Assembly (NCBI RefSeq): GCF_001194135.2
Contig: NC_068982.1
Location: 100,222,201-100,275,627, forward strand
Direction: 5' to 3'
DNA length: 53,427 nucleotides
Origin: Octopus bimaculoides
Lineage: Eukaryota
Shown: positions 111 to 52,030 of the stretch, piece after piece
How the letters are laid out: each line of letters starts with the position of its first letter
Numbering within the stretch: the stretch's first letter is position 1
Notes under the pieces: generated by a model
Told to the model about the DNA's origin: nothing
The model's database searches: none
The model's input: the letters and a program-made list of their open reading frames with translations, nothing else
Made by a program: the position numbers and the translations under genes

Positions 111-1362
111 GTGTTAACTAGGAAGTTAGTTTTTGTATGTGGCAGATGTTCAGGTGCAATAAACACTGAAAATGTGCAGAAAACAACTTTTGTCACATTC
201 CAGAAAGAAAAACTGGATGTAGTTGATAGCTTCCGATATGTGGGTGACCAAGTTAGTAGTGGGGGAGGGTGTGCTGAAAGTGTAGCTGCTAGAATAAAAA
301 TAGCCTGGGCAAAGTTCAGAGAGCTCTTACCTCTGCTGGCAACAAAGGGCCTCTCACTCAGAGTAAAAGGCAGACTGTATGACGCATGTGTACGAACAGA
401 CATCCTACATGGCAGTGAAACATTGGCCGTGACTGCTGAGGACATGTGTAAGCTCGCAAGGAATGAAGCCAGTATGCTCCGATGGATGAGTAATGTCAAT
501 GGGCATACCCAACAGAGTGTAAGTATCTTGAGAGAAAAGTTGAACCTTAGAAGCATCAGTTGTGGTGTGCAAGAGAGACGATTGCGCTGGTATGGACATA
601 TGGCGAGAATGGATGAGGATAGCTGTGTGAAAACGTGCCACACCCTAGCGGTTGAGGGAACCCATGGAAGAGGCAGGCTCAGACCAAGACCTTTGGAAAT
701 ATGCTGTGCGTGAGAAGACCCGGCAAGCCAAGTGAGACCAAAATCCAAGGCTTCTGCCAGGGATATAGCCAGCCCACTTACACGTAACATTCCTTCATTG
801 GACACTAAACTCCGCTTGTGAAGACCTGTTGAGACAAGTGAAATCGAAATCAAACTAAATTTGTAAACTGGCACCCATGCCAACATCTCTTCATTGAACA
901 CTAAACTCAGCTTGCGAAGACCTGTTGGGGCAAGCGAAATCGAGCATGACCGTTGCCAGAGCACCAGCTGTCTGGCTTCCGTGCCGGTGGCACATAAATG
1001 GCACCATTTGAGCGTGATCGTTACCGACGTCGCCTTCCTGGCACTTGTGCCAGTGGCACGTGAAAAGACATTCGAGTGAGTTCGTTGCCAGTACCACTGG
1101 ACTGGCCCCTCAGCAGGTGGCACGTAAAATACACCATTTCAAGCGTGGCCGTTGCCAGTACATCCTGACTGGCCTTTGTGCCAGTGGCACGTAAAAGCAC
1201 CCACTACACTCTCAGAGTGGTTGGCGTTAGGAAGGGTATCCATCTGTAGAAACTCTGCCAAATCAAACTGGAACCTGGTGCAGCCATCTGGTTCACCAGT
1301 CCTCAGTCAAATCGTCCAACCCATGCTAGCATGGAAAGCAGATGTTAAACAATGATGATGAT
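111..1362 (+). mobile_element. 5'-truncated RTE-clade LINE: C-terminal ORF remnant (111-713) plus 3'UTR with hairpin array and (GAT)n tail
   Basis: Translation has VDSFRYVGD, RIKIAWAKFREL, HGSET, RLRWYGHMARM and EGTHGRGR, typical of the RTE post-RT region. The 3' end GCATGGAAAGCAGATGTTAAACAATGATGATG is shared with other copies in the window. Confidence 0.9.
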
Positions 1363-28790: not shown

Positions 28791-29699
28791 TTCATAATAA
28801 CTTGCATCCTACTAGAGGTTATAGTGAAATTGGTAGTAAAAATTAAAATAAATATAAGAGTTAGATTAGGAAGTATAATTCTAATATCCTCATTAGTGGA
28901 CTGATATATGGTAGTGATAGCAGTAATAACAGTGTTGATGACAAGGATACAAATAGTGAATCACAAGCTATGTACAGTGGTGGAATTTCGATAACCACAA
29001 CAGATAATGGAAGAAATAGGCTAGGAACTCATTATTGTTAGAATGACTCCACTGATTCTTGTTGCAGTCAATCTAATAGCAACATATGATCCATCAAAAT
29101 AAAATTATAAAGTTAGACACCATAGGGCGGGAAAAGGAGACAGATTACATAATAATGGCATAATTTGGTACAACCCTCCTTGGAATTAAGCAACTGCTAC
29201 TGATCTTGCTGAAAATAGGTTTAGCATGTTAGAAAAGACCCTCCTCCTCATCATTTAATAAGTACAACCAGACATCTTCTACTCTTCTTAACCTTGGGAC
29301 TATTATAGCAGGCTTCAATCGATAGATTATTAATTTAGCCTGATATTATGATCAGAATGTAATAGATAGAAATATGAATGTTAGGCAACTTGTAGCTACA
29401 ACTAATACAGTTCTGAACTGTACTGGGCAAAATAATGAAAATGGGAACGCAAGCAGTAACACATTTAAGGTTAATGCCATGAACAGTAATGGTAGTAATG
29501 GGCAATAATATTAATTTTTACAATAAGAGGCAGTGTATCAACAGCAGTGTTATTTCGATAAATAATAGCAATAATAGCTTATACCAATGTCATTTTAATG
29601 ATTGTAGTAATAATGATAGTGGGTGTAAAGATATGTGTAATGTGAGGTGTTGTTATAATCAAATAAAAAAATCATAGTACTAGTAATAGTAATAACATC

Positions 29700-29986
29700 A
29701 TCGTCATCAAGAAGAAGAAGAAGAAGAAGACGACGAAGAAGAAGACGAAGAAGACGACGAAGAAGATGAAGAAGAAGACGAAGAAGAAGAAGAAAAAGAA
29801 GACGAAGAAGAAGAAGACGAAGAAGACGAAGAAGAAGACGAAGAAGACGAAGAAGACGAAGAAGAAGACGAAGAAGAAGAAAAAGAAGACGAAGAAGAAG
29901 ACGAAGAAGGAGACGAAGAATAATAATAATAATAATAAGAAGAAGAAGAAGAAGAAGAACAACAACAACAACAACAACAACAACAA
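29700..29986. repeat. Compound trinucleotide microsatellite (GAA/GAC)n-(TAA)n-(GAA)n-(CAA)n
   Basis: Direct reading. Confidence 0.95.
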
Positions 29987-31055
29987 ATAATATAAGTGCT
30001 TGTACAGAGCAACATTCTTGTGTCAGTATTGCCAAAAATCATCATTATGGGATGTTAGACTGTGTACCTAAAAAATGTAGTAGGAATTCAGTTAATACAC
30101 ACTTGATTGCTCACGCAAATAGCTGCCCATTGCCTGCTGATAAGGTCAGCAATATATGGTTCCCTATTGTTGATATAAATAGCCCTAATCCTGCCAGTGT
30201 ACGTAGCACCAGGTGATTGGAGGCTGGGAAAATAAGTATTGATAATGTAAATATTACAATTACTGATGCACTGATGGATAACTAAGGGTTTTGATGTAAT
30301 TGAATTTAATGCAACCAATTAAAATGTGACAGCCCTACTAATGTTAGCAATTATAATAACATTAGCCATTGTAGTAATGTTATTTGAGTCATCTTATTAG
30401 TTTTACTGCTTCAACTAGCTTATATAATAATTGTGATAATAATTACCTTGTTACTCCTAGAACGTGCAAGTGTCATAACATAAATGCTTGTCCGGTTAAT
30501 AATACCTGTTTAGGTAGTAATACAGCTTACAAGTGTGATATCATTACTGATGCTAAAACCTTAACTTATATAGGCGCAACGTGTCACAACTTCAAATTCA
30601 GATTGAGTAATCACCTTTCATCATTTTGATATCACAATAAAGCTTGAATGACAGCCCTAACAGAAAAGGTGTGGCAATTAATGGATAATAATACTCAGTT
30701 TGAAATTGCCTGAAGTATAGTTAGGAAGCATTGCCATATTTCAATAACAGGTATAGCTGTATGCTGTACATGAAATATTAAAATATCTAGTTAACCTGCT
30801 GAATAAGATATGTGAATTTTGCATTATGGTAAAAAGACATTCACTTACTTCGAACCTGTTATGTAATGTCTACAGATACCAAACTGTCTATTTCTAACAG
30901 AGATTAATTCAGTTAGTTCTGCAATCCTCTAACCCGTATTGAACCTAAGTTACTATTAGTGTTATACTGTTATATGTGCTCTTGGTATGATTGCATTACA
31001 TAATATAATTATGATATAATTTACGACCTCATTCTGGACATAACCTCCCTCTCTC

Positions 31056-33275
31056 ATGAAGACATGGAAAGCCCCCGGCCCATCAGGAATCACTACAGAG
31101 ATGCTTAAAATATCTGGCGGTGTCAGCTATAGCCTAGTCACTCGTATAGTTAACCAGATGATACATAAAGGAGTCATACCCAATGACTGGTGTAGCAGCA
31201 CCATAGTCAACTGCTACAAAGGTAAAGGTGATGTTTTAGACACAAATAATTACAGAGGTATCAAGTTGTTGGATCAGGTAGTGGAGGTCACGGAGAGGGT
31301 TATAGCCCAACTAATTAGAGAGAGAGTCAGTCTAGATGAGCTGCAGTTTAGGTTCGTGCCCAGGGAAAACACCACCGATGCTATATTTCTGGTAAGACAG
31401 CTGCAGGAGAAATACCTAGCCAAAGATAAACCTCTGTACCTGGCTTTTGTTGACATGGAGAAAGCTTTTGACAGGGTCCCCTGATTCCTTATCTGGTGGT
31501 CAATGAGGAAACTAGGGATAGATGAATGGTTAGTGAGAGCTGTGCAAGCCATGTACAGGGATGTTGTCAGTAAGGTGAGTGTTGGCAATGACTACAGTGA
31601 AGAATTCCGGGTAGGGGTAGGGGTCTACCAAGGATCAATCCTCAGCCCCCTCTTATTCATCATAGTCCTCCAGGCAATAACAATGGAATTCAAGACAGGA
31701 TGCCCCTGGGAGCTCCTCTATGCTGATGATCTTGCTCTAATTGCTGAGTCACTACCAGAACTAGAGGAAAAGTTTCAGGTGTGGAAGCAAAGATTAGAAT
31801 CAAAGGGCCTTAGAGTCAACCTAGCTAAAACCAAAGTCTTAATAAGTAAGAAGGCAGACAAACCACAAATCTCTTCAGGTAGATGGCCCTGCTCAATCTG
31901 TAGAAAAGGCGTAGGTAGAAATTCCACAAGATGTACCCAGTGTAAGCTATGGACACATAAGAGGTGCGGGAATATCAAAGGAAGGCTAACTGGGAAGATA
32001 GTTTTTGTATGTGGCAAATGCTCAGGTGCTATAAACACTGAAAATGTGCAGAGAACAGCTTNNNNNNNNNNGCAAATGCTCAGGTGCTATAAACACTGAA
32101 AATGTGCAGAGAACAGCTTCTGTCACATTCCAGGGAGAAAAACTAGAAGTAGTTGATAGCTTTCATTATCTAGGGGACCAAGTCAGTAGTGGAGGTGGAT
32201 GCTCTGAAAGTGTAGCTGGTAGAATAAGAACAGCCTGGGTAAAGTTCAGAGTGCTCCTACCTCTGCTGGGGACAAAGGACCTCTCGCTCAGAGTAAAAGG
32301 TAGACTGTCTGGCACATGTGTATGAACAGCCATGCTACATGGCAGTGGAACATGGACCGTGACTGCTGAGGACATGCGTAAGCTTGCAAGGAATGAAGCC
32401 AGTATGCTCCATTGGATGTTTAATGTCATTCATACACGACGGAGTGTAAGCGCCCTGAGAGAAAAGTTGGATTTAAGAAGCATCAGAATTGGTGTGCAAG
32501 AGAGACTGCGCTAGTATGGTCATTTAGCGAGAATGAATGAGGACAGCTGTGTGAAAAAGTGTCATACCTTAGCAGTTGAGGGAACCTGTGGAAGAGGTAG
32601 ACTCAGGAAGATTTGGGATGAGGTGGTGAAGCACAACCTTCGAACACTGGGACTTACCAAGGCAATGACTAGTGAGCAAGACCTTTGGAGATATGCTGTG
32701 CTAGAGAAGACCTGACAGTGGGTGTAACCCCTTATTCATTGGACAATAAACTTGCTTGCAAAAACCTGTTGAAGAAAGTGAAATCAAAATCAAAATTGCT
32801 GACAGACCCGCCTGATTGGTACTTGTGCCAGTGGAACATTAAAAGCACCATCCAAGCGTGATCGTTGCCAGGGCTACTGATCGGTTGCCGTGCAGGTTGC
32901 ATGTAAAAAGCACCATTCGAGCATGATCATTGCCAGCGTTGCCTTACTGCCACATGTCCCAGTGGCACGTGAAAAACAACATTCGAGCAAGGTCGTTGCC
33001 AGTGCTGCTGGACTGGCTCCCGTGCAGGTAGCACATAAAAAACACATTCTGAGCTTGGTCGCTGCCGGAACCGCCTGACTTGCCCTCGTACCAGTGGTAC
33101 ATAAAAGTACCCATTACACTTTCGGAGTGGTTGGTATTAGGAAGGGCATCCGGCTGTAGAAACTTTGTCAGATCAAATTAGAGCCTTGTGCAGCCTTCTG
33201 GCTTACCAGTCATCAGTCAAACTGTCCAATCCATGCCAGCATGGAAAACAGACGTTAAACAACGATGATGATGAT
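31056..33275 (+). mobile_element. 5'-truncated RTE LINE: RT domain (YADD), PHD-like finger, 3'UTR array, (GAT)n tail
   Basis: KAPGPSGI, NYRGIKLL, AFVDMEKAFDRVP, GVYQGSILSPLLF and LLYADDL (31719-31730). The frame is broken by point stops (31482, 32323, 32512) and a 10-N gap. Confidence 0.95.
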
Positions 33276-45220: not shown

Positions 45221-45965
45221 ATCATCTTCATCATTGTCATTTAACATCTGCTTTCCATGCTGGCATGGGTTTGACGGTTTGACTGAGAGCTGGCAAGCCA
45301 GAAGGCTGCACCAGGCTCCAATCCGATCTGGCAAAGTTTCTACAGCTGGATACCCTCCGTAATGCCAACCATTCTGAGAGTGTAGTGCCACCGGCACTGG
45401 CATTGACCATGTTCAGATGGTGCTTTTTACGTGCCACCGGCATGGGAGCCAGTCAGGTAGCACTGGCGACGACCATGCTTGAATGGTGCTTTTTACGTGC
45501 CTCTGGCATGAGACCAGTCAGTTAGCACTGGCATCGACCACGCTCGAATGGTGCTTTTTACATACTACTGGCATGGGTGCCAATCAGGCGGTACTGTCAT
45601 CGGCTACGACAATGACTTCACTGGACTCAACAGGTCTTCGCAAACGCAGTTTATTGCCCAATGATTGAAGGGTACTCTTACATGGGCTGGTTATGCTGCA
45701 CTGGCATAGGCCACAGTTACAGTCTCACTTGGCTTGCCGGGTCTTCTCAAGCACAGCATATCTCTAAAGGTTTTGATCACTTGTCATCACCTTCGTGAAG
45801 CCCAACATTCGAAGGTTGTGCTTCATCACCTCATCCCAGGTCTTCCTGAGTTCCTCTCTTGCACAGGTTCCCTCTACTGCTAGGGTATGACACTTTTTTA
45901 CACAGTTGTCCTCATCCATATTATGTAACATGACTATACCACCACAGTCGTCTCTCTTGCACACT
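45221..45965 (-). mobile_element. RTE LINE 3' end
   Basis: MDEDNCVKKCHTLAVEG..RKTWDEVMKHNLR, followed by the 3'UTR array and (GAT)n tail. Confidence 0.9.
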
Positions 45966-46469
45966 ACCAAGATTTATTTAGTTCTATACCAATTACAAAT
46001 GTGCCAAAACTCAAGACACTGTGACTTGTACTTTTGGATTTAACTAGGTCTGAAAACTCTGTGGAATTGACTCTTTGTGACATGTAACAAAATAGGCTTT
46101 ACATAAATATTTTTAAAATTTGTCAAAAGGAAAAAGTTTTTTTTACCAAGAACCTGAAAAAAGTTGGTAACTGCTATACCATGCTCACTATTGATTTGTG
46201 TAATTTGAAAATGATTATTGCTTCAATTTCAAAGATATGACATCACAAATATGACTAATTAGGCACAATTTCAATCATTCAAATCGTCATATTTCCTAAA
46301 ATATTCACCTAAATTTCACAAATGAGATATCAAAATGTCTCTTTTTGGATGCTCTCCAAGATGAAGTACAGTAGAAATTACATTAAATATTTTCAAAAAT
46401 TTAGAATGATACCTACTTGAAGGTTCCTGTACATCTTCCACATACAAACACCACTTCTTCTGTTAATGA

Positions 46470-46620: not shown

Positions 46621-46870
46621 TGAAATACAAAGTCTACAATAGCATTCTAGTTTTATATTCGTTTATGAAGTTTGCACCTTTTGTTTTTATACCAATTTTA
46701 CCTTTTCCATTAACCATGTTGTCTAATTTTATTGCAGGAACTTTGAAATGATGTATGATTGGACACAATTAAAGAGTAGCTGCTGCAACAGTTCCAGTTT
46801 ACCATTTCTGAACCTTTGTTGAAAGTGAAAAAAGGGAAAAAGAAGAAAATAAGCATTTGGTTGGATAAAT

Positions 46871-48191
46871 ATGAAGTCCAGTGGTGATCATTGTATTATT
46901 TTGTCTGATTCCAGTTCTGAGTGGAGTTCTCTACCTGATTTAACAGAGCTTTCAGATACAGAGGATCTGTTTCTGTCTAGATTTAACCAACCAAAATCTT
47001 GTACAGGGACTAAAATTGGACCTGACTTTGTAATAGAAGTTGATGATGACTCTGATAATCAAGAAAATGATGTTATTTTGATTGAGGATACAAATGATGA
47101 CACCAAAAATTCTTTTTGTACAATACCAGAAAGGAAACCCAACACGAACTGTGTAGTGGATGCTTATTTTCCAAGACAGAATATAATCAAAAAATGTTTG
47201 TTTGTTCCTTATTTATTTCAGTCTCCGTCAACCGATGTGATAAAATATGGTAAAAGCTTACAACTTCAGTCTTTGTTGTCTATGACACTTATATGTTCAT
47301 ACGTTGAAGAAGGGACTGCATTCGCCAATTATACATCTTATATTACTGATGTTTTATATAACTGCAAACCTGATATTTCCGTTTCCAAAAACTTATTTAA
47401 ATTACTTATATCAATCAACTCTGATAAATCTCACAAAATGAATGAATTTCTTCATTTGTCTTCTTCTGAAATCTATCGACTTCTTAATGTTATTTGTCAC
47501 CGTTACCCAGAAAACATCAGGTTCGTCTGGTCTGAGTTTTCAGAGATAGCAAAGGCGACACCAGTGTCATTAATTAACTTGTTTTTGGTTGTTGAACTTT
47601 GTCTAAGTGTTTTTGAATCTGAACTGAATGAAATTGTTTCCTCAAAAACCACTGAAATAAAAAAGTTCCAGACTTATAAAATACTTGCCAATGAAGAAGC
47701 TCATTCCTCTGTTAGGTGCATAATTACAATGTTGAAATATTCTTTTAATATTTTACAAGAAGAAAGTTCTGATGTGTTAGAAATTCTAATTCATAAATTG
47801 CAAAAATTACTAGAAATTTCTGTATATATTAGTTGCAAAAGTATTTCAATGGCTGAACATGTTGCTAAACATCTTGTCAGTTTATACAATAACCTTCCTC
47901 AATTGAAATACCGTATCAAATTGATTACATCTATCAAATCAGAGTTGATACGATTTAAAATGATGGAAAATATTTTGGTATTGTATTATGATAGCATAAC
48001 GTTACAATGGGATGATATGCCTGTTTCTTTTACTAGTCTAGCAGAATGTTTCTTTCAGGCCTTACCACGGAAGAATTCTATGTTTAGTACTTATAGCGAC
48101 ATTGAAGTTATATCATACCATGAACAATCTTGTGAAGAACTTATCATGATCATATATTACACAGTCAACAGCTATATCCTTTATTTACAAC
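46871..48191 (+). CDS. SIMC1: First coding exon (440 codons plus 1 nt, phase 1) of a SIMC1-like protein (SUMO-interacting motifs plus Nse5-like domain); 3' exons not located
   Basis: Long non-repetitive ORF. Acceptor TTTTATTGCAG|G at 46737/46738, in-frame stop at 46850, ATG at 46871, donor CAAC|GTAAGT at 48191/48192. By-eye match to human SIMC1 recalled from memory: YRLLNVICHRYPEN~YMLLMKIQQLHPAN, HSSVRCIITML~PHNVRDVIKWL, LQKLLEISV~LQRMLSIAV, IKSELIRFKMMENIL~MESHLLRCKVLEII, CEELIMIIYYTVNSY~WDELVEHLQFLLSSY. Exon confidence is high; orthology is unverified. Confidence 0.7.
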
Positions 48192-48352
48192 GTAAGTCAA
48201 GCATATTTTTTTGTTCTTTTTGTGTGTCCATTTGCTATTTATTTATGTTATTATTTAGAACCAGGTCAGTCTTCATTGAGCAGGTCTGTGATAAATGTCG
48301 TTCCAGCTGTGATCATTCTGTCTTAGGATTAGTAAGTATAATGCTAATTACA

Positions 48353-49225
48353 ATGGCTATGTAATAAGAAGCTTGCTTCCCAACCACATTCCAGGTTCAG
48401 TCCCACTGCATGTCACCTTGGGCAAGTGTCTTCTACTTGAGCCTCGGGCCGACAAAAGCCTTGTGAGTGGATTAGGTAGATGGAAACTGAAAGAAGCCTA
48501 TTGTATATATATTCGTGATTGAACCAAATTCGATGACTGGCACCTGTGCCAGTGGAGCGCTAAGAGCACCGTCTGAGCGTGATCATTGCCAGAGTAGCCG
48601 TCTGGCTTCCGTGCTAGTGGCACGTAAATAGCTCCATTTGAGCGTGATCGTTACCAGCGTTGCCTTAATGGCACTTGTGCTGGTGGCACGTGAACAAAAC
48701 ATTCAAGCGAGGTCATTGCCAGTGCTGCTGAACTGGCTCCTGTGCAGGTGGCACGTAAAATATACCATTTTGAGCATGGCCGTTGCCAGTACCACCTGAG
48801 TAGCCTTCATGCCGGTGGCACGTAAAAGCACCCACTACACTCTTGGAGTGGTTGGCGTTAGGAAGGGCACCCAGCTGTAGAAACTCTGCCAGATCAGATT
48901 GGAGCCTGGTGCAGCCACCTGGTTCGCCAGTTCTCAGTCAAATCGTTCAACCCATGCTAGCATGGAAGGCGGATGTTAAATGATGATGATGATGTTGATA
49001 TATCTATTTGTTTGTTCCCCCACCATCACTTGAGAACTGATGTTGGTGTGTTTTTGACCCCCCCCCCCCAACTTATAATTTAGCAGTTCGGCAACAGAGA
49101 ATGATAGAATAAGTACTAGGTTTATAAAGAATAAGTCTTGGGGTTAATTTGTTCGACTAAAACCCTTCAAGGCAGTGATTTAGCATGCCAGCAGTCAAAT
49201 GACTGAAATGTGTAAACGAATAAGA
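48353..49225 (+). mobile_element. Composite SINE split by an RTE 3'UTR segment
   Basis: Head and core at 48353-48500, second half and tail at 49005-49225. Confidence 0.8.
48517..48994 (+). mobile_element. RTE LINE 3'UTR fragment
   Basis: Hairpin-array units and terminal GCATGGAAGGCGGATGTTAAATGATGATG. Confidence 0.9.
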
Positions 49226-50843: not shown

Positions 50844-51788
50844 ATCATCATCATTATCATTGTTTAACGTCCACTTTCCATGCTAGCATGAGTTGGACAA
50901 TTTGACTGAGGACTGGCAAACCAGATGGCTGCACCAGGCTCCAATCTGATCTGACAGAGTTTCTACAGCTGGATGCCCTCACTAACACCAACCACTCTGA
51001 GAGTGTAGTGGGTGCTTTTACATGCCACCGGCATGAGGGCCTGTCTGGTTGTACTGGCAACGGCCACGCTCAAATGGTGCTTTTTACATGCCACCTGCAC
51101 AAGAGTCAGTCCAGTGGCACTGGCAACGACCTCGTTTGAATGTTTTGTTCACGTGCCAGTAAGGCAACGCTGGTAACGATCATGCTCAAATGGTGCTTTT
51201 TACCTGCCACCGGCATGGAAGCTAGACAGCTACTCTGGCAGTGATCCCACTCGGATGGTACTGTTAGCGCTCCACTGGCATGGGTGCCAGTCATTGAATT
51301 TGGTTCAATTTCGATTTCACTTGCCCCAACAGGTCTTCGCAAGCTGAGTTTAGTGTCCAATGAAGGAAGGTTGGCATGGGTGCCAGTCGTCAAATTTGGT
51401 TCGATTTCAATTTCACTTGCCTCAACAGGTCTTCGCAAGCAGAGTTTTGTGTCCAAAGAAGGAAAGGTACGCATAAGTGGGCTGGCTATACCCCTGGTAA
51501 AAGCCACGGGTTATGGTCTCACTTGTCTTGCTGGCTCTTCTCATGCACAGCATATTTCCAAAGGTCTCGGTCACTAGTCATTGCCTCGGTGAGACCTAAT
51601 GTTCGAAAGTCGTGCTTCACCACCTCATCCCAGGTCTTCCTGGGTCTACCTCTTCCACAGGTTCCCTCAACCGCTAGGGTGTGGCACTTTTTCACACAGG
51701 TATCCTCATTCATTCTCGCCACATGACCATACCAGTGCAATCGTCTCTCTTGCACACCACAACTGATGCTTCTTAGGTTCAACTTTTT
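50844..51788 (-). mobile_element. RTE LINE 3' end (ORF tail plus full 3'UTR)
   Basis: KLNLRSISCGVQERRLHWYGHVARM..GRGRPRKTWDEVV..DRDLWKYAV, a duplicated ~105 bp block, hairpin array and (GAT)n tail. Confidence 0.95.
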
Positions 51789-51848
51789 GTATATATATAC
51801 ATTTATGTGTATATATGTTTGTGTACATATATGTTTATATATATATAT

Positions 51849-52030
51849 ACTCTTTACTCTTTTACTTGTTTCAGTCATGTGACTGTGGCCACGCTGGAGC
51901 AAATCGACTCCAGGACTTATTCTTTGAACGCGTAGTACTTATTCTATCGGTCTCTTTTGCCGAAGCGCTAAGTTACGGGGATGTAAATACACCAGCATCG
52001 GTTGTCAAGCGATGTTGGGGGGACAAACAT
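51849..52030 (-). mobile_element. Composite SINE 3' half (rest in gap)
   Basis: Reverse-complement match to 22450-22645. Confidence 0.85.

What the first reader, a model, noticed from the sequence alone, without database searches (positions are those of the whole stretch)
46871..48191. Candidate invertebrate SIMC1-like (Nse5-like) SMC5/6 regulator
Seen: a single long non-repetitive coding exon with clean splice signals. Inference: residues of about 95-440 align by eye, block after block and in order, to the C-terminal Nse5-like domain of human SIMC1 as recalled from memory. Established: SIMC1 and SLF1 each pair with SLF2 (Nse6-like) to recruit SMC5/6; SIMC1-SLF2 targets SUMO-rich sites such as viral replication centres and silences extrachromosomal DNA. 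This exon has an in-frame upstream stop, no BRCT domain and SIM-like motifs at the N-terminus, which fits SIMC1 rather than SLF1. A mollusc copy would indicate that SUMO-directed SMC5/6 targeting is not restricted to vertebrates.
Basis: partly seen in the sequence, partly recalled or inferred. Interest (0 to 1): 0.75.

Follow-up and report, generated by a model that had tools for sequence, protein, structure and literature searches.

The report
Octopus SIMC1-like SMC5/6 cofactor gene
This exon encodes most of the octopus counterpart of human SIMC1, the protein that steers the SMC5/6 DNA-guarding complex to SUMO-marked sites. It is a diverged invertebrate member of a known family, and relatives in other invertebrates already carry that name in public databases.

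Summary
Window 46871-48191 (+) is the first of two coding exons of Octopus bimaculoides LOC106871623, annotated as "uncharacterized" (510 aa). An in-frame TAA lies 7 codons upstream, and the GTAAGT donor is conserved in three octopods.

The interpretation also holds.
- A profile of three octopod proteins, searched against 1.84 billion proteins, found 38 relatives. All match in their C-terminal part. They include molluscs, hemichordates, a brittle star and Nematostella.
- NCBI already names three of these relatives (Haliotis cracherodii isoforms, Ptychodera, Amphiura) "SIMC1-like".
- The family profile matches one PDB sequence significantly: human SIMC1 (7T5P chain A, E=5e-44). A profile built from named molluscs only still gives 1e-27.
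- An AlphaFold2 model (pLDDT 83) has one significant Foldseek match, the same chain (TM 0.64/0.66).
- The N-terminus is predicted disordered and carries three SIM-like motifs.
- No BRCT or ankyrin domain is present, so the architecture is SIMC1-like and not SLF1-like.
- The two acidic SIMC1 residues that contact SMC6 (E480/E481) are conserved as E146/E147.

SLF2 binding, SUMO binding and orthology relative to SLF1 were not tested. This is a fast-evolving new member of a known kind. Interest is moderate.

The parts
46850..46852 (+). In-frame TAA stop, 7 codons upstream of the start codon
   Evidence: Translation of 46691-46873 ends ...K*AFGWINM.
46871..48191 (+). Coding exon 1 (aa 1-440 plus the first base of codon 441) of the octopus SIMC1-like gene LOC106871623
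   Evidence: ORF listing. 100% tblastn match to P0001. The exon structure is conserved in O. vulgaris and Argonauta.
46895..46921 (+). SIM-like motif 1 (aa 9-17, IILSDSSSE): hydrophobic core followed by an acidic/serine tract
   Evidence: I9, I10, S12, D13, S14 and S16 are invariant in four octopod proteins. Similar N-terminal motifs occur in many relatives, e.g. VIILSDSNS, IIVISDDEE, LIILSDEED and Nematostella LICLSSDEE. The region is predicted disordered, pLDDT 20-29.
47027..47056 (+). SIM-like motif 2 (aa 53-62, FVIEVDDDSD)
   Evidence: Motif scan and shuffle test. Present in the three Octopus-type sequences. Argonauta has EVIVIKDEDPED nearby.
47069..47101 (+). SIM-like motif 3 (aa 67-77, DVILIEDTNDD)
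   Evidence: Motif scan and shuffle test. Conserved in O. vulgaris and P0003.
47180..47251 (+). Conserved segment just before the helical domain (aa 104-127, NIIKKCLFVPYLFQSPSTDVIKYG). It may correspond to the SIMC1 loop (431-451) that inserts between SIMC1 and SLF2; this is inference only.
   Evidence: Many columns are invariant among octopods: I106, K107, K108, C109, F111, P113, Y114, L115, Q117, S118, P119, S120. pLDDT is low in the monomer model. The SIMC1 loop is described in PMC9708086.
47231..48191 (+). Nse5-like alpha-solenoid domain, the part inside the window (aa 121-440). The remaining helices (aa 441-~505) are in exon 2, outside the window.
   Evidence: Profile match to human SIMC1 7t5p_A, E=5.1e-44. 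Mollusc-only profile, 1.2e-27. AF2 model pLDDT 83. Foldseek TM 0.64/0.66 to 7t5p_A as the only significant hit.
47306..47311 (+). E146-E147, aligned with SIMC1 E480-E481, which form salt bridges with the SMC6 neck
   Evidence: hmmalign pairing. These columns are acidic in 34 and 36 of 40 family members. The role of E480/E481 is taken from PMC12656486.
48192..48197 (+). Splice donor GTAAGT of the ~9.8 kb intron
   Evidence: Sequence. CAAC|GTAAGTCAAG is conserved in three octopods. The acceptor TTTTCTTTGTAG|GT lies at L001 21098/21099.

Best explanation
The exon encodes residues 1-440 of the octopus orthologue of SIMC1, the Nse5-like cofactor of the SMC5/6 complex.

Shown here:
- The C-terminal four-fifths of the protein is an alpha-solenoid homologous in sequence and fold to the Nse5-like domain of human SIMC1.
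- The N-terminal ~120 residues are predicted disordered and carry three SIM-like motifs, each a hydrophobic core flanked by acidic or serine residues.
- There is no BRCT or ankyrin module.
- The gene is intact, has the same structure and the same neighbour in other octopods, and is under moderate purifying selection.

Inferred by analogy with human SIMC1 and yeast Nse5:
- The solenoid pairs head-to-tail with the Nse6-like protein SLF2.
- The composite surface, including the conserved E146/E147 pair on helix 1, docks on the SMC6 neck.
- The SIMs bind SUMO or poly-SUMO, concentrating SMC5/6 at SUMO-rich nuclear sites where it can load onto and silence extrachromosomal or viral DNA.
For: Identity and gene structure.

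Family membership:
- The octopod profile found 38 proteins at E<=0.001 among 1.84 billion. All matches lie in the C-terminal part of the hit.
- Named hits are molluscs, hemichordates, an echinoderm and a cnidarian. Three of them are named SIMC1-like by NCBI.

Link to human SIMC1:
- Family profile against PDB: 7t5p_A at E=5.1e-44, the only significant hit.
- Mollusc-only profile: 1.2e-27.
- Stepping stones by single-sequence phmmer from the human SIMC1 fragment: Ptychodera 2.7e-23, Haliotis 5.8e-11, and P0005 1.5e-6. P0005 is the octopods' closest relative, itself found at 1.8e-46 by the octopod profile.

Fold: AF2 model pLDDT 83.3, pTM 0.83. Foldseek finds 7t5p_A at E=3.2e-7, TM 0.64/0.66, 397 columns; the next-best TM in the top 50 is 0.37 or less.

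SMC6-contact pair: E480/E481 correspond to E146/E147, and those columns are acidic in 34-36 of 40 members.

SIMs. Disorder.

No BRCT or ankyrin.

A neighbour-joining tree roughly follows the species tree, and human SIMC1 groups with the hemichordate sequences.

Selection: dN/dS is 0.28-0.47 in the domain. Synteny with an MRPL35-like gene is shared by Octopus and Argonauta.
Against: - Direct octopus-human similarity is not significant: phmmer E=0.17-0.41. The octopod-only profile gives E=0.06-0.2. The link is therefore transitive.
- Two of the four SIMC1 residues shown to contact SMC6 are not conserved: R473 aligns with T139 and N477 with S143.
- SIM motifs 2 and 3 are poorly conserved in Argonauta, and the N-terminus evolves almost neutrally between the two Octopus species (dN/dS 0.99, based on few substitutions).
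- No SLF2 orthologue, SUMO binding or expression evidence was examined.
- Yeast Nse5 did not appear among the top 50 Foldseek matches.
- No antiviral or plasmid-silencing role is shown for any invertebrate.
Confidence: 0.8

Rival explanations
1. The gene descends from the single Nse5-like gene that existed before SIMC1 and SLF1 separated. It would then be co-orthologous to both, and in octopus it may serve all SMC5/6 loading, including DNA-lesion and replication-fork recruitment, rather than a specialised SUMO/extrachromosomal-DNA branch.
For: Only one O. bimaculoides protein was recovered by either search. No relative with BRCT or ankyrin domains turned up among the 38 hits tested. The SIM-plus-solenoid architecture reaches back to Nematostella. 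PMC9708086 reports that SLF1 and SIMC1 detect each other by HHpred. Reviews call them paralogues.
Against: In the tree, human SIMC1 groups with the hemichordate sequences, as an orthologue would, but SLF1 was not included. The octopod-seeded search would probably miss a very divergent SLF1-like gene, so absence is not shown.
Confidence: 0.3
2. It is an unrelated alpha-helical repeat protein (generic HEAT/ARM-like solenoid), and its resemblance to SIMC1 is convergent or due to composition.
For: Pairwise identity to SIMC1 is only 14-17%. There is no Pfam hit. Many solenoids give weak Foldseek matches.
Against: SIMC1 is the only significant PDB hit both by sequence profile (E=5e-44, against 0.21 for the next hit) and by fold (TM 0.64/0.66, against 0.37 or less for the rest of the top 50). 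The match covers nearly the whole chain in order. Pfam lacks a model for this domain even for human SIMC1.
Confidence: 0.02
3. It is a decaying or non-functional gene copy: an ORF kept by chance inside a repeat-rich region.
For: The surrounding sequence is full of LINE fragments, microsatellites and assembly gaps. dN/dS is fairly high, 0.36-0.54 over the whole exon. P0003 reads through the donor into the intron.
Against: The 440-codon ORF and its donor site are intact in three octopod genomes at dS of about 0.9. The domain dN/dS is 0.28-0.29 over that distance. Exon 2 and its acceptor are intact. Synteny is conserved.
Confidence: 0.03

Closest known systems
Human SIMC1 (C5orf25), the Nse5-like subunit of the SIMC1-SLF2 cofactor of SMC5/6 (PDB 7T5P chain A; PMC9708086, PMC12656486)
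   Same: The domain order is the same: a disordered N-terminus with tandem SIM-type motifs, then a C-terminal alpha-solenoid of about 17 helices. The solenoid is homologous by profile (E=5e-44) and by fold (TM 0.64/0.66). The acidic pair E480/E481 that contacts the SMC6 neck is conserved. Motifs shared with the family include LQxLLxxxVxVS, SxLLxFK and (C/W)(E/D)EL.
   Different: The octopus protein is much shorter (510 aa, against the 872 aa implied by the 284-872 construct). Its disordered region is ~120 aa, where the human solenoid begins at residue 468. The disordered 629-653 insert between helices 8 and 9 is lacking. It has three SIM-like motifs where two are annotated in human. R473 and N477 are not conserved. 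Identity is about 15%. No functional data exist.
Invertebrate proteins named 'SUMO-interacting motif-containing protein 1-like' in RefSeq (Haliotis cracherodii XP_071089535/6, Ptychodera flava XP_070541227, Amphiura filiformis XP_072025163)
   Same: They belong to the same family and were recovered directly by the octopod profile. The helical domain is C-terminal, and the Haliotis rufescens representative of the abalone cluster (P0010) has N-terminal SIM-like motifs.
   Different: They are close enough to vertebrate SIMC1 to be named automatically (phmmer 3e-23 to 6e-11 against the human fragment). The octopod proteins are too diverged (E about 0.2-0.4) and remain 'uncharacterized'.
Human SLF1 (ANKRD32/BRCTx), the other Nse5-like partner of SLF2
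   Same: According to PMC9708086, SLF1 has an Nse5-like solenoid that binds SLF2 in the same way as SIMC1.
   Different: SLF1 has N-terminal tandem BRCT domains and an ankyrin-repeat domain inserted into the solenoid. Neither is present here.
Yeast Nse5 of the Nse5/6 subcomplex (PDB 7LTO, 7SDE)
   Same: It has the same proposed role and overall solenoid topology, and docks on the Smc6 neck (literature).
   Different: It was not detected here by Pfam or among the top 50 Foldseek matches. Even human SIMC1 superimposes on it only at 6-8 A r.m.s.d. after manual alignment.

Membership tests
SIMC1 (metazoan Nse5-like SMC5/6 cofactor) | C-terminal alpha-solenoid homologous to SIMC1 residues 468-858 | tested here: met
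   Family profile vs PDB: 7t5p_A E=5.1e-44. Mollusc-only profile: 1.2e-27. Foldseek E=3.2e-7, TM 0.64/0.66, the only significant hit.
SIMC1 (metazoan Nse5-like SMC5/6 cofactor) | Tandem SUMO-interacting motifs in an N-terminal disordered region | tested here: met
   Met at motif level only. There are three SIM-like motifs within aa 9-77, and 9 of 20,000 shuffles reach three. pLDDT is 20-29. Motif 1 is invariant in octopods. SUMO binding itself cannot be tested here.
SIMC1 (metazoan Nse5-like SMC5/6 cofactor) | Forms a heterodimer with SLF2 (Nse6-like) | not testable with these tools
SIMC1 (metazoan Nse5-like SMC5/6 cofactor) | Helix-1 residues that contact the SMC6 neck (R473, N477, E480, E481) | tested here: inconclusive
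   E480/E481 align with E146/E147 and are conserved. R473 aligns with T139 and N477 with S143, so these are not conserved.
SIMC1 (metazoan Nse5-like SMC5/6 cofactor) | Orthology: single copy, gene tree following species tree, vertebrate SIMC1 grouping with the invertebrate family | tested here: inconclusive
   One copy per octopod. In the NJ tree human SIMC1 groups with the hemichordate sequences. There is no bootstrap support and no SLF1 sequence in the tree.
SLF1 | N-terminal tandem BRCT domains | tested here: not met
   No Pfam hit in the octopus protein or in 18 full-length relatives.
SLF1 | Ankyrin-repeat domain inserted into the Nse5-like solenoid | tested here: not met
   No ankyrin family hit in any of the 40 domain sequences. 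The AF2 model shows a continuous solenoid.
SLF2 / Nse6 (CANIN domain) | Similarity to the SLF2 C-terminal solenoid | tested here: not met
   7t5p chain B is not among the top 50 Foldseek matches, although it is in the same entry as the top hit. There is no Pfam hit.
Fungal Nse5 | Match to the fungal Nse5 family model or to solved yeast Nse5 structures | tested here: not met
   No Pfam hit at E<=10 other than a chance AP5B1_N match. No yeast Nse5 chain appears in the top 50 Foldseek matches. The literature needed HHpred plus manual superposition even for human SIMC1.

The most novel reading that the evidence does not exclude
The SIM-plus-Nse5-like architecture is the ancestral animal form of the SMC5/6 loader. 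It was already present in the cnidarian-bilaterian ancestor, and SLF1 is a later BRCT/ankyrin-bearing derivative. If so, SUMO-directed loading of SMC5/6 onto foreign or extrachromosomal DNA would be an ancient animal genome-defence route, and the fast evolution of the octopod copy could reflect conflict with DNA viruses or mobile elements.
Probability: 0.3. Interest if true: 0.6.

Novelty: new member of a known kind. Interest (0 to 1): 0.4.

Why it matters
The papers found here treat SIMC1 and SLF1 as human or mammalian Nse5-like factors. They stress that Nse5/6 proteins lack cross-species sequence conservation.

This locus, together with the 38-member family recovered from it, shows a recognisable SIMC1-type protein in cephalopods, gastropods, bivalves, hemichordates, an echinoderm and a cnidarian. 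N-terminal SIM-like motifs are seen in many of these, but not in the hemichordate or echinoderm models, some of which may be incomplete at the N-terminus.

That gives a functional annotation to an "uncharacterized" octopus gene. It also supplies a diverse alignment good enough for AlphaFold (pLDDT rose from 43 to 83). And it makes the question "is SUMO-directed SMC5/6 targeting older than vertebrates?" testable.

The result is not a surprise. An Nse5-like subunit is expected wherever SMC5/6 exists, and RefSeq already labels some invertebrate members SIMC1-like.

Tried and rejected
- Single-sequence Pfam and PDB searches with the 440-aa exon product found nothing meaningful.
- The octopod-only profile put SIMC1 second in PDB, but at a non-significant E=0.2. 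The top hit, 3toc_A (E=0.017), did not recur with the deeper profile.
- The first AlphaFold2 run, with a 3-sequence alignment, was unusable (pLDDT 43).
- The word-indexed search with the 40-sequence alignment returned only 5 proteins and added nothing.
- One literature search was too loosely specified and returned irrelevant papers.
- tblastn for the C-terminal 70 aa inside the window found nothing. The second exon is outside the window.
- I could not obtain SLF2 or SLF1 Nse5-domain sequences, so the partner search and the SIMC1-versus-SLF1 phylogeny were not done.
- I considered and rejected a generic solenoid, a pseudogene and an SLF2-like identity (see rival explanations and the membership test).
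- A weak RTT107_BRCT_5 hit (E=0.0019, one of 40 trimmed domains) was treated as chance.

Full report
**What is at the coordinates.**
- The window is Octopus bimaculoides genomic DNA. The exon product is 100% identical to NCBI "uncharacterized protein LOC106871623", 510 aa (P0001).
- An ORF starts at ATG 46871. An in-frame TAA at 46850-46852 precedes it.
- The annotated protein follows the ORF for 440 codons plus one base.
- The remaining 70 residues are not in the window. In the chromosome record (L001) they lie in a second exon behind a TTTTCTTTGTAG acceptor, about 9.8 kb downstream and about 4.5 kb past the window end.
- The exon contains no tandem repeats. It is the only long non-repeat ORF in a window otherwise made of LINE reverse-transcriptase fragments, microsatellites and assembly gaps.

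**Is it a real gene?**
- O. vulgaris (91% identity), a third Octopus-like sequence (85%) and Argonauta hians (63%) have the same protein.
- The three genomes share the donor sequence CAACGTAAGTCAAG.
- Octopus and Argonauta share the downstream neighbour, an MRPL35-like gene on the opposite strand.
- Nei-Gojobori dN/dS for exon 1 against Argonauta (dS about 0.9) is 0.28-0.29 in the helical domain and 0.67-0.68 in the N-terminal 120 residues.
- The gene is therefore constrained but fast-evolving.

**What family is it?**
- Single-sequence searches against Pfam and PDB were empty.
- A profile of three octopod proteins put human SIMC1 second in PDB, but only at E=0.2.
- The same profile, run exhaustively against 1.84 billion representative proteins, found 38 proteins at E<=0.001 (16 at <=1e-10). 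Every match lies in the C-terminal part of the hit.
- The named hits are:
  - gastropods: Haliotis, Patella, Lottia, Littorina, Batillaria, Pomacea;
  - bivalves: Mactra, Sinanodonta, Tegillarca, Dreissena, Saccostrea;
  - hemichordates: Ptychodera, Glandiceps;
  - the brittle star Amphiura;
  - the cnidarian Nematostella.
- NCBI calls the Haliotis cracherodii, Ptychodera and Amphiura proteins "SUMO-interacting motif-containing protein 1-like".
- I trimmed the 40 sequences to the domain and aligned them (A3). That profile has one significant match among 177,635 distinct PDB sequences: 7t5p_A, human SIMC1, E=5.1e-44 over 379 of 442 profile positions. The next hit is at E=0.21.
- To check that this does not rest on the deuterostome members, I rebuilt the profile from subsets of A3 and searched the SIMC1 fragment printed, using the same database size. 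Fourteen named molluscs give E=1.2e-27. The octopods plus their two closest relatives give 8.4e-11. The octopods alone give 0.06.
- Single-sequence phmmer from the human fragment reaches Ptychodera (2.7e-23), Haliotis (5.8e-11), Saccostrea (1.6e-9), P0005 (1.5e-6) and Nematostella (1.6e-5), but not the octopods (0.17-0.41).
- The homology is thus secure but transitive. This explains why the octopus gene stayed unnamed.
- Pfam has no model for this domain even for human SIMC1.

**Structure.**
- With the 3-sequence alignment, AlphaFold2 failed (pLDDT 43).
- With A3 it gave mean pLDDT 83.3 and pTM 0.83: an all-helical solenoid of about 17-18 helices from residue ~121 to ~501. Human SIMC1 has 17 helices.
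- Foldseek against 350,542 PDB chains found one match with E<=0.001: 7t5p_A (E=3.2e-07, probability 1.00, TM 0.64/0.66, 397 alignment columns against a 403-residue chain, 14% identity).
- Everything else in the top 50 is a generic solenoid with TM of 0.37 or less.
- SLF2 (chain B of the same entry, which has a similar topology) and yeast Nse5 do not appear in the top 50.

**Architecture: SIMC1 rather than SLF1.**
- The first ~120 residues are predicted disordered (pLDDT 20-29).
- They contain three motifs of the classical SIM type: IILSDSSSE (9-17), FVIEVDDDSD (53-62) and DVILIEDTNDD (67-77).
- Only 9 of 20,000 composition-preserving shuffles give three or more. The motif rule was written after seeing the sequence.
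- Motif 1 is invariant in octopods. Similar N-terminal motifs recur across the family, including in Nematostella.
- Neither the octopus protein nor 18 full-length relatives have a BRCT or ankyrin hit.
- None of the 40 domains has an ankyrin insertion. These are the features that define SLF1.

**Functional residues.**
- PDB chain numbering plus 283 gives SIMC1 residue numbers (the construct is 284-872). This was verified because R473, N477, E480 and E481 fall on R, N, E and E.
- In the profile alignment, E480 and E481 pair with octopus E146 and E147. In human SIMC1 these two residues form salt bridges to SMC6 K957 and K942.
- Those columns are acidic in 34 and 36 of 40 family members.
- R473 and N477 are not conserved in the octopus protein (T139, S143).
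- The octopus protein lacks the disordered 629-653 insert of SIMC1.
- A strongly conserved segment before the solenoid (aa 104-127) may correspond to the SIMC1 loop that inserts between SIMC1 and SLF2. This is inference only.

**Phylogeny.**
- A neighbour-joining tree on 335 profile columns groups octopods with P0005 and P0006. Bivalves and gastropods fall into mostly taxon-consistent groups.
- Human SIMC1 groups with the hemichordate sequences, in a wider cluster with Amphiura and Nematostella.
- This is what orthology predicts. The tree has no support values and lacks SLF1.

**Mechanism.**
- Shown: homology of the solenoid to SIMC1, presence of SIM-type motifs in a disordered N-terminus, and absence of SLF1 modules.
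- Inferred from human and yeast work:
  - the solenoid dimerises with an SLF2/Nse6-like partner;
  - the composite surface binds the SMC6 neck;
  - the SIMs tether the complex to SUMO-rich sites, directing SMC5/6 loading and silencing of extrachromosomal or viral DNA.
- Whether the octopus protein is dedicated to that branch or serves all SMC5/6 loading (the pre-duplication scenario) is open.

**Novelty.**
- The papers I could search describe SIMC1 and SLF1 as human or mammalian factors. I found no discussion of invertebrate orthologues.
- RefSeq names already expose SIMC1-like proteins in abalone, acorn worm and brittle star.
- The finding is therefore a correct functional annotation of a diverged new member of a known family, with a modest evolutionary implication. 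It is not a new kind of system.

Noticed in passing
window 111-713 (+), 31056-32099 (+), 45764-45970 (-), 51519-51902 (-): ORF fragments of LINE-type reverse transcriptases. They share a recurring C-terminal tail, ...RLRWYGHxARMxEDxCVKKCHTLAVEGTxGRGRPRKTWDEV..., so several decayed copies of one retrotransposon family flank the gene.
   Followed up: no
window ~7.6-8.0 kb, 9.9-10.9 kb, 18.2-18.5 kb, 19.9-20.6 kb, ~50.74 kb, 52.04-52.29 kb: Runs of N (assembly gaps), seen as X-runs in the ORF translations. The intron downstream of the exon is also rich in TA/CA-type microsatellites.
   Followed up: no
L001 21099-21310 (about 4.5 kb beyond the window end): Second and last coding exon (aa 441-510) of the same gene, behind a TTTTCTTTGTAG acceptor. 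The intron is about 9.8 kb.
   Followed up: yes
L001 26007-31310 (-) and L002 11087-11469 (-): The downstream neighbour on the opposite strand is a Ribosomal_L35p (MRPL35-like) gene in both O. bimaculoides and Argonauta hians, so local synteny is conserved.
   Followed up: partly
window 46871-47230 (aa 1-120): The N-terminal disordered region evolves much faster than the domain (dN/dS 0.67-0.99 against 0.28-0.47). SIM motifs 2 and 3 are rearranged in Argonauta, while motif 1 is invariant.
   Followed up: partly
window 48192-48364: The ORF reads through the donor for 57 more codons into the intron. P0003, a Logan-assembled relative, carries a similar read-through tail, which suggests an unspliced or genomic contig rather than an alternative C-terminus.
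   Followed up: no
window 29595-30035 (-): A 146-aa ORF made almost entirely of leucine/arginine repeats (LLLRLL...). It is a low-complexity repeat and not a gene candidate.
   Followed up: no
alignment A3 (one of 40 trimmed domains): One family member gave a weak Pfam hit to RTT107_BRCT_5 (E=0.0019). It is below any useful threshold, and I did not identify which member.
   Followed up: no
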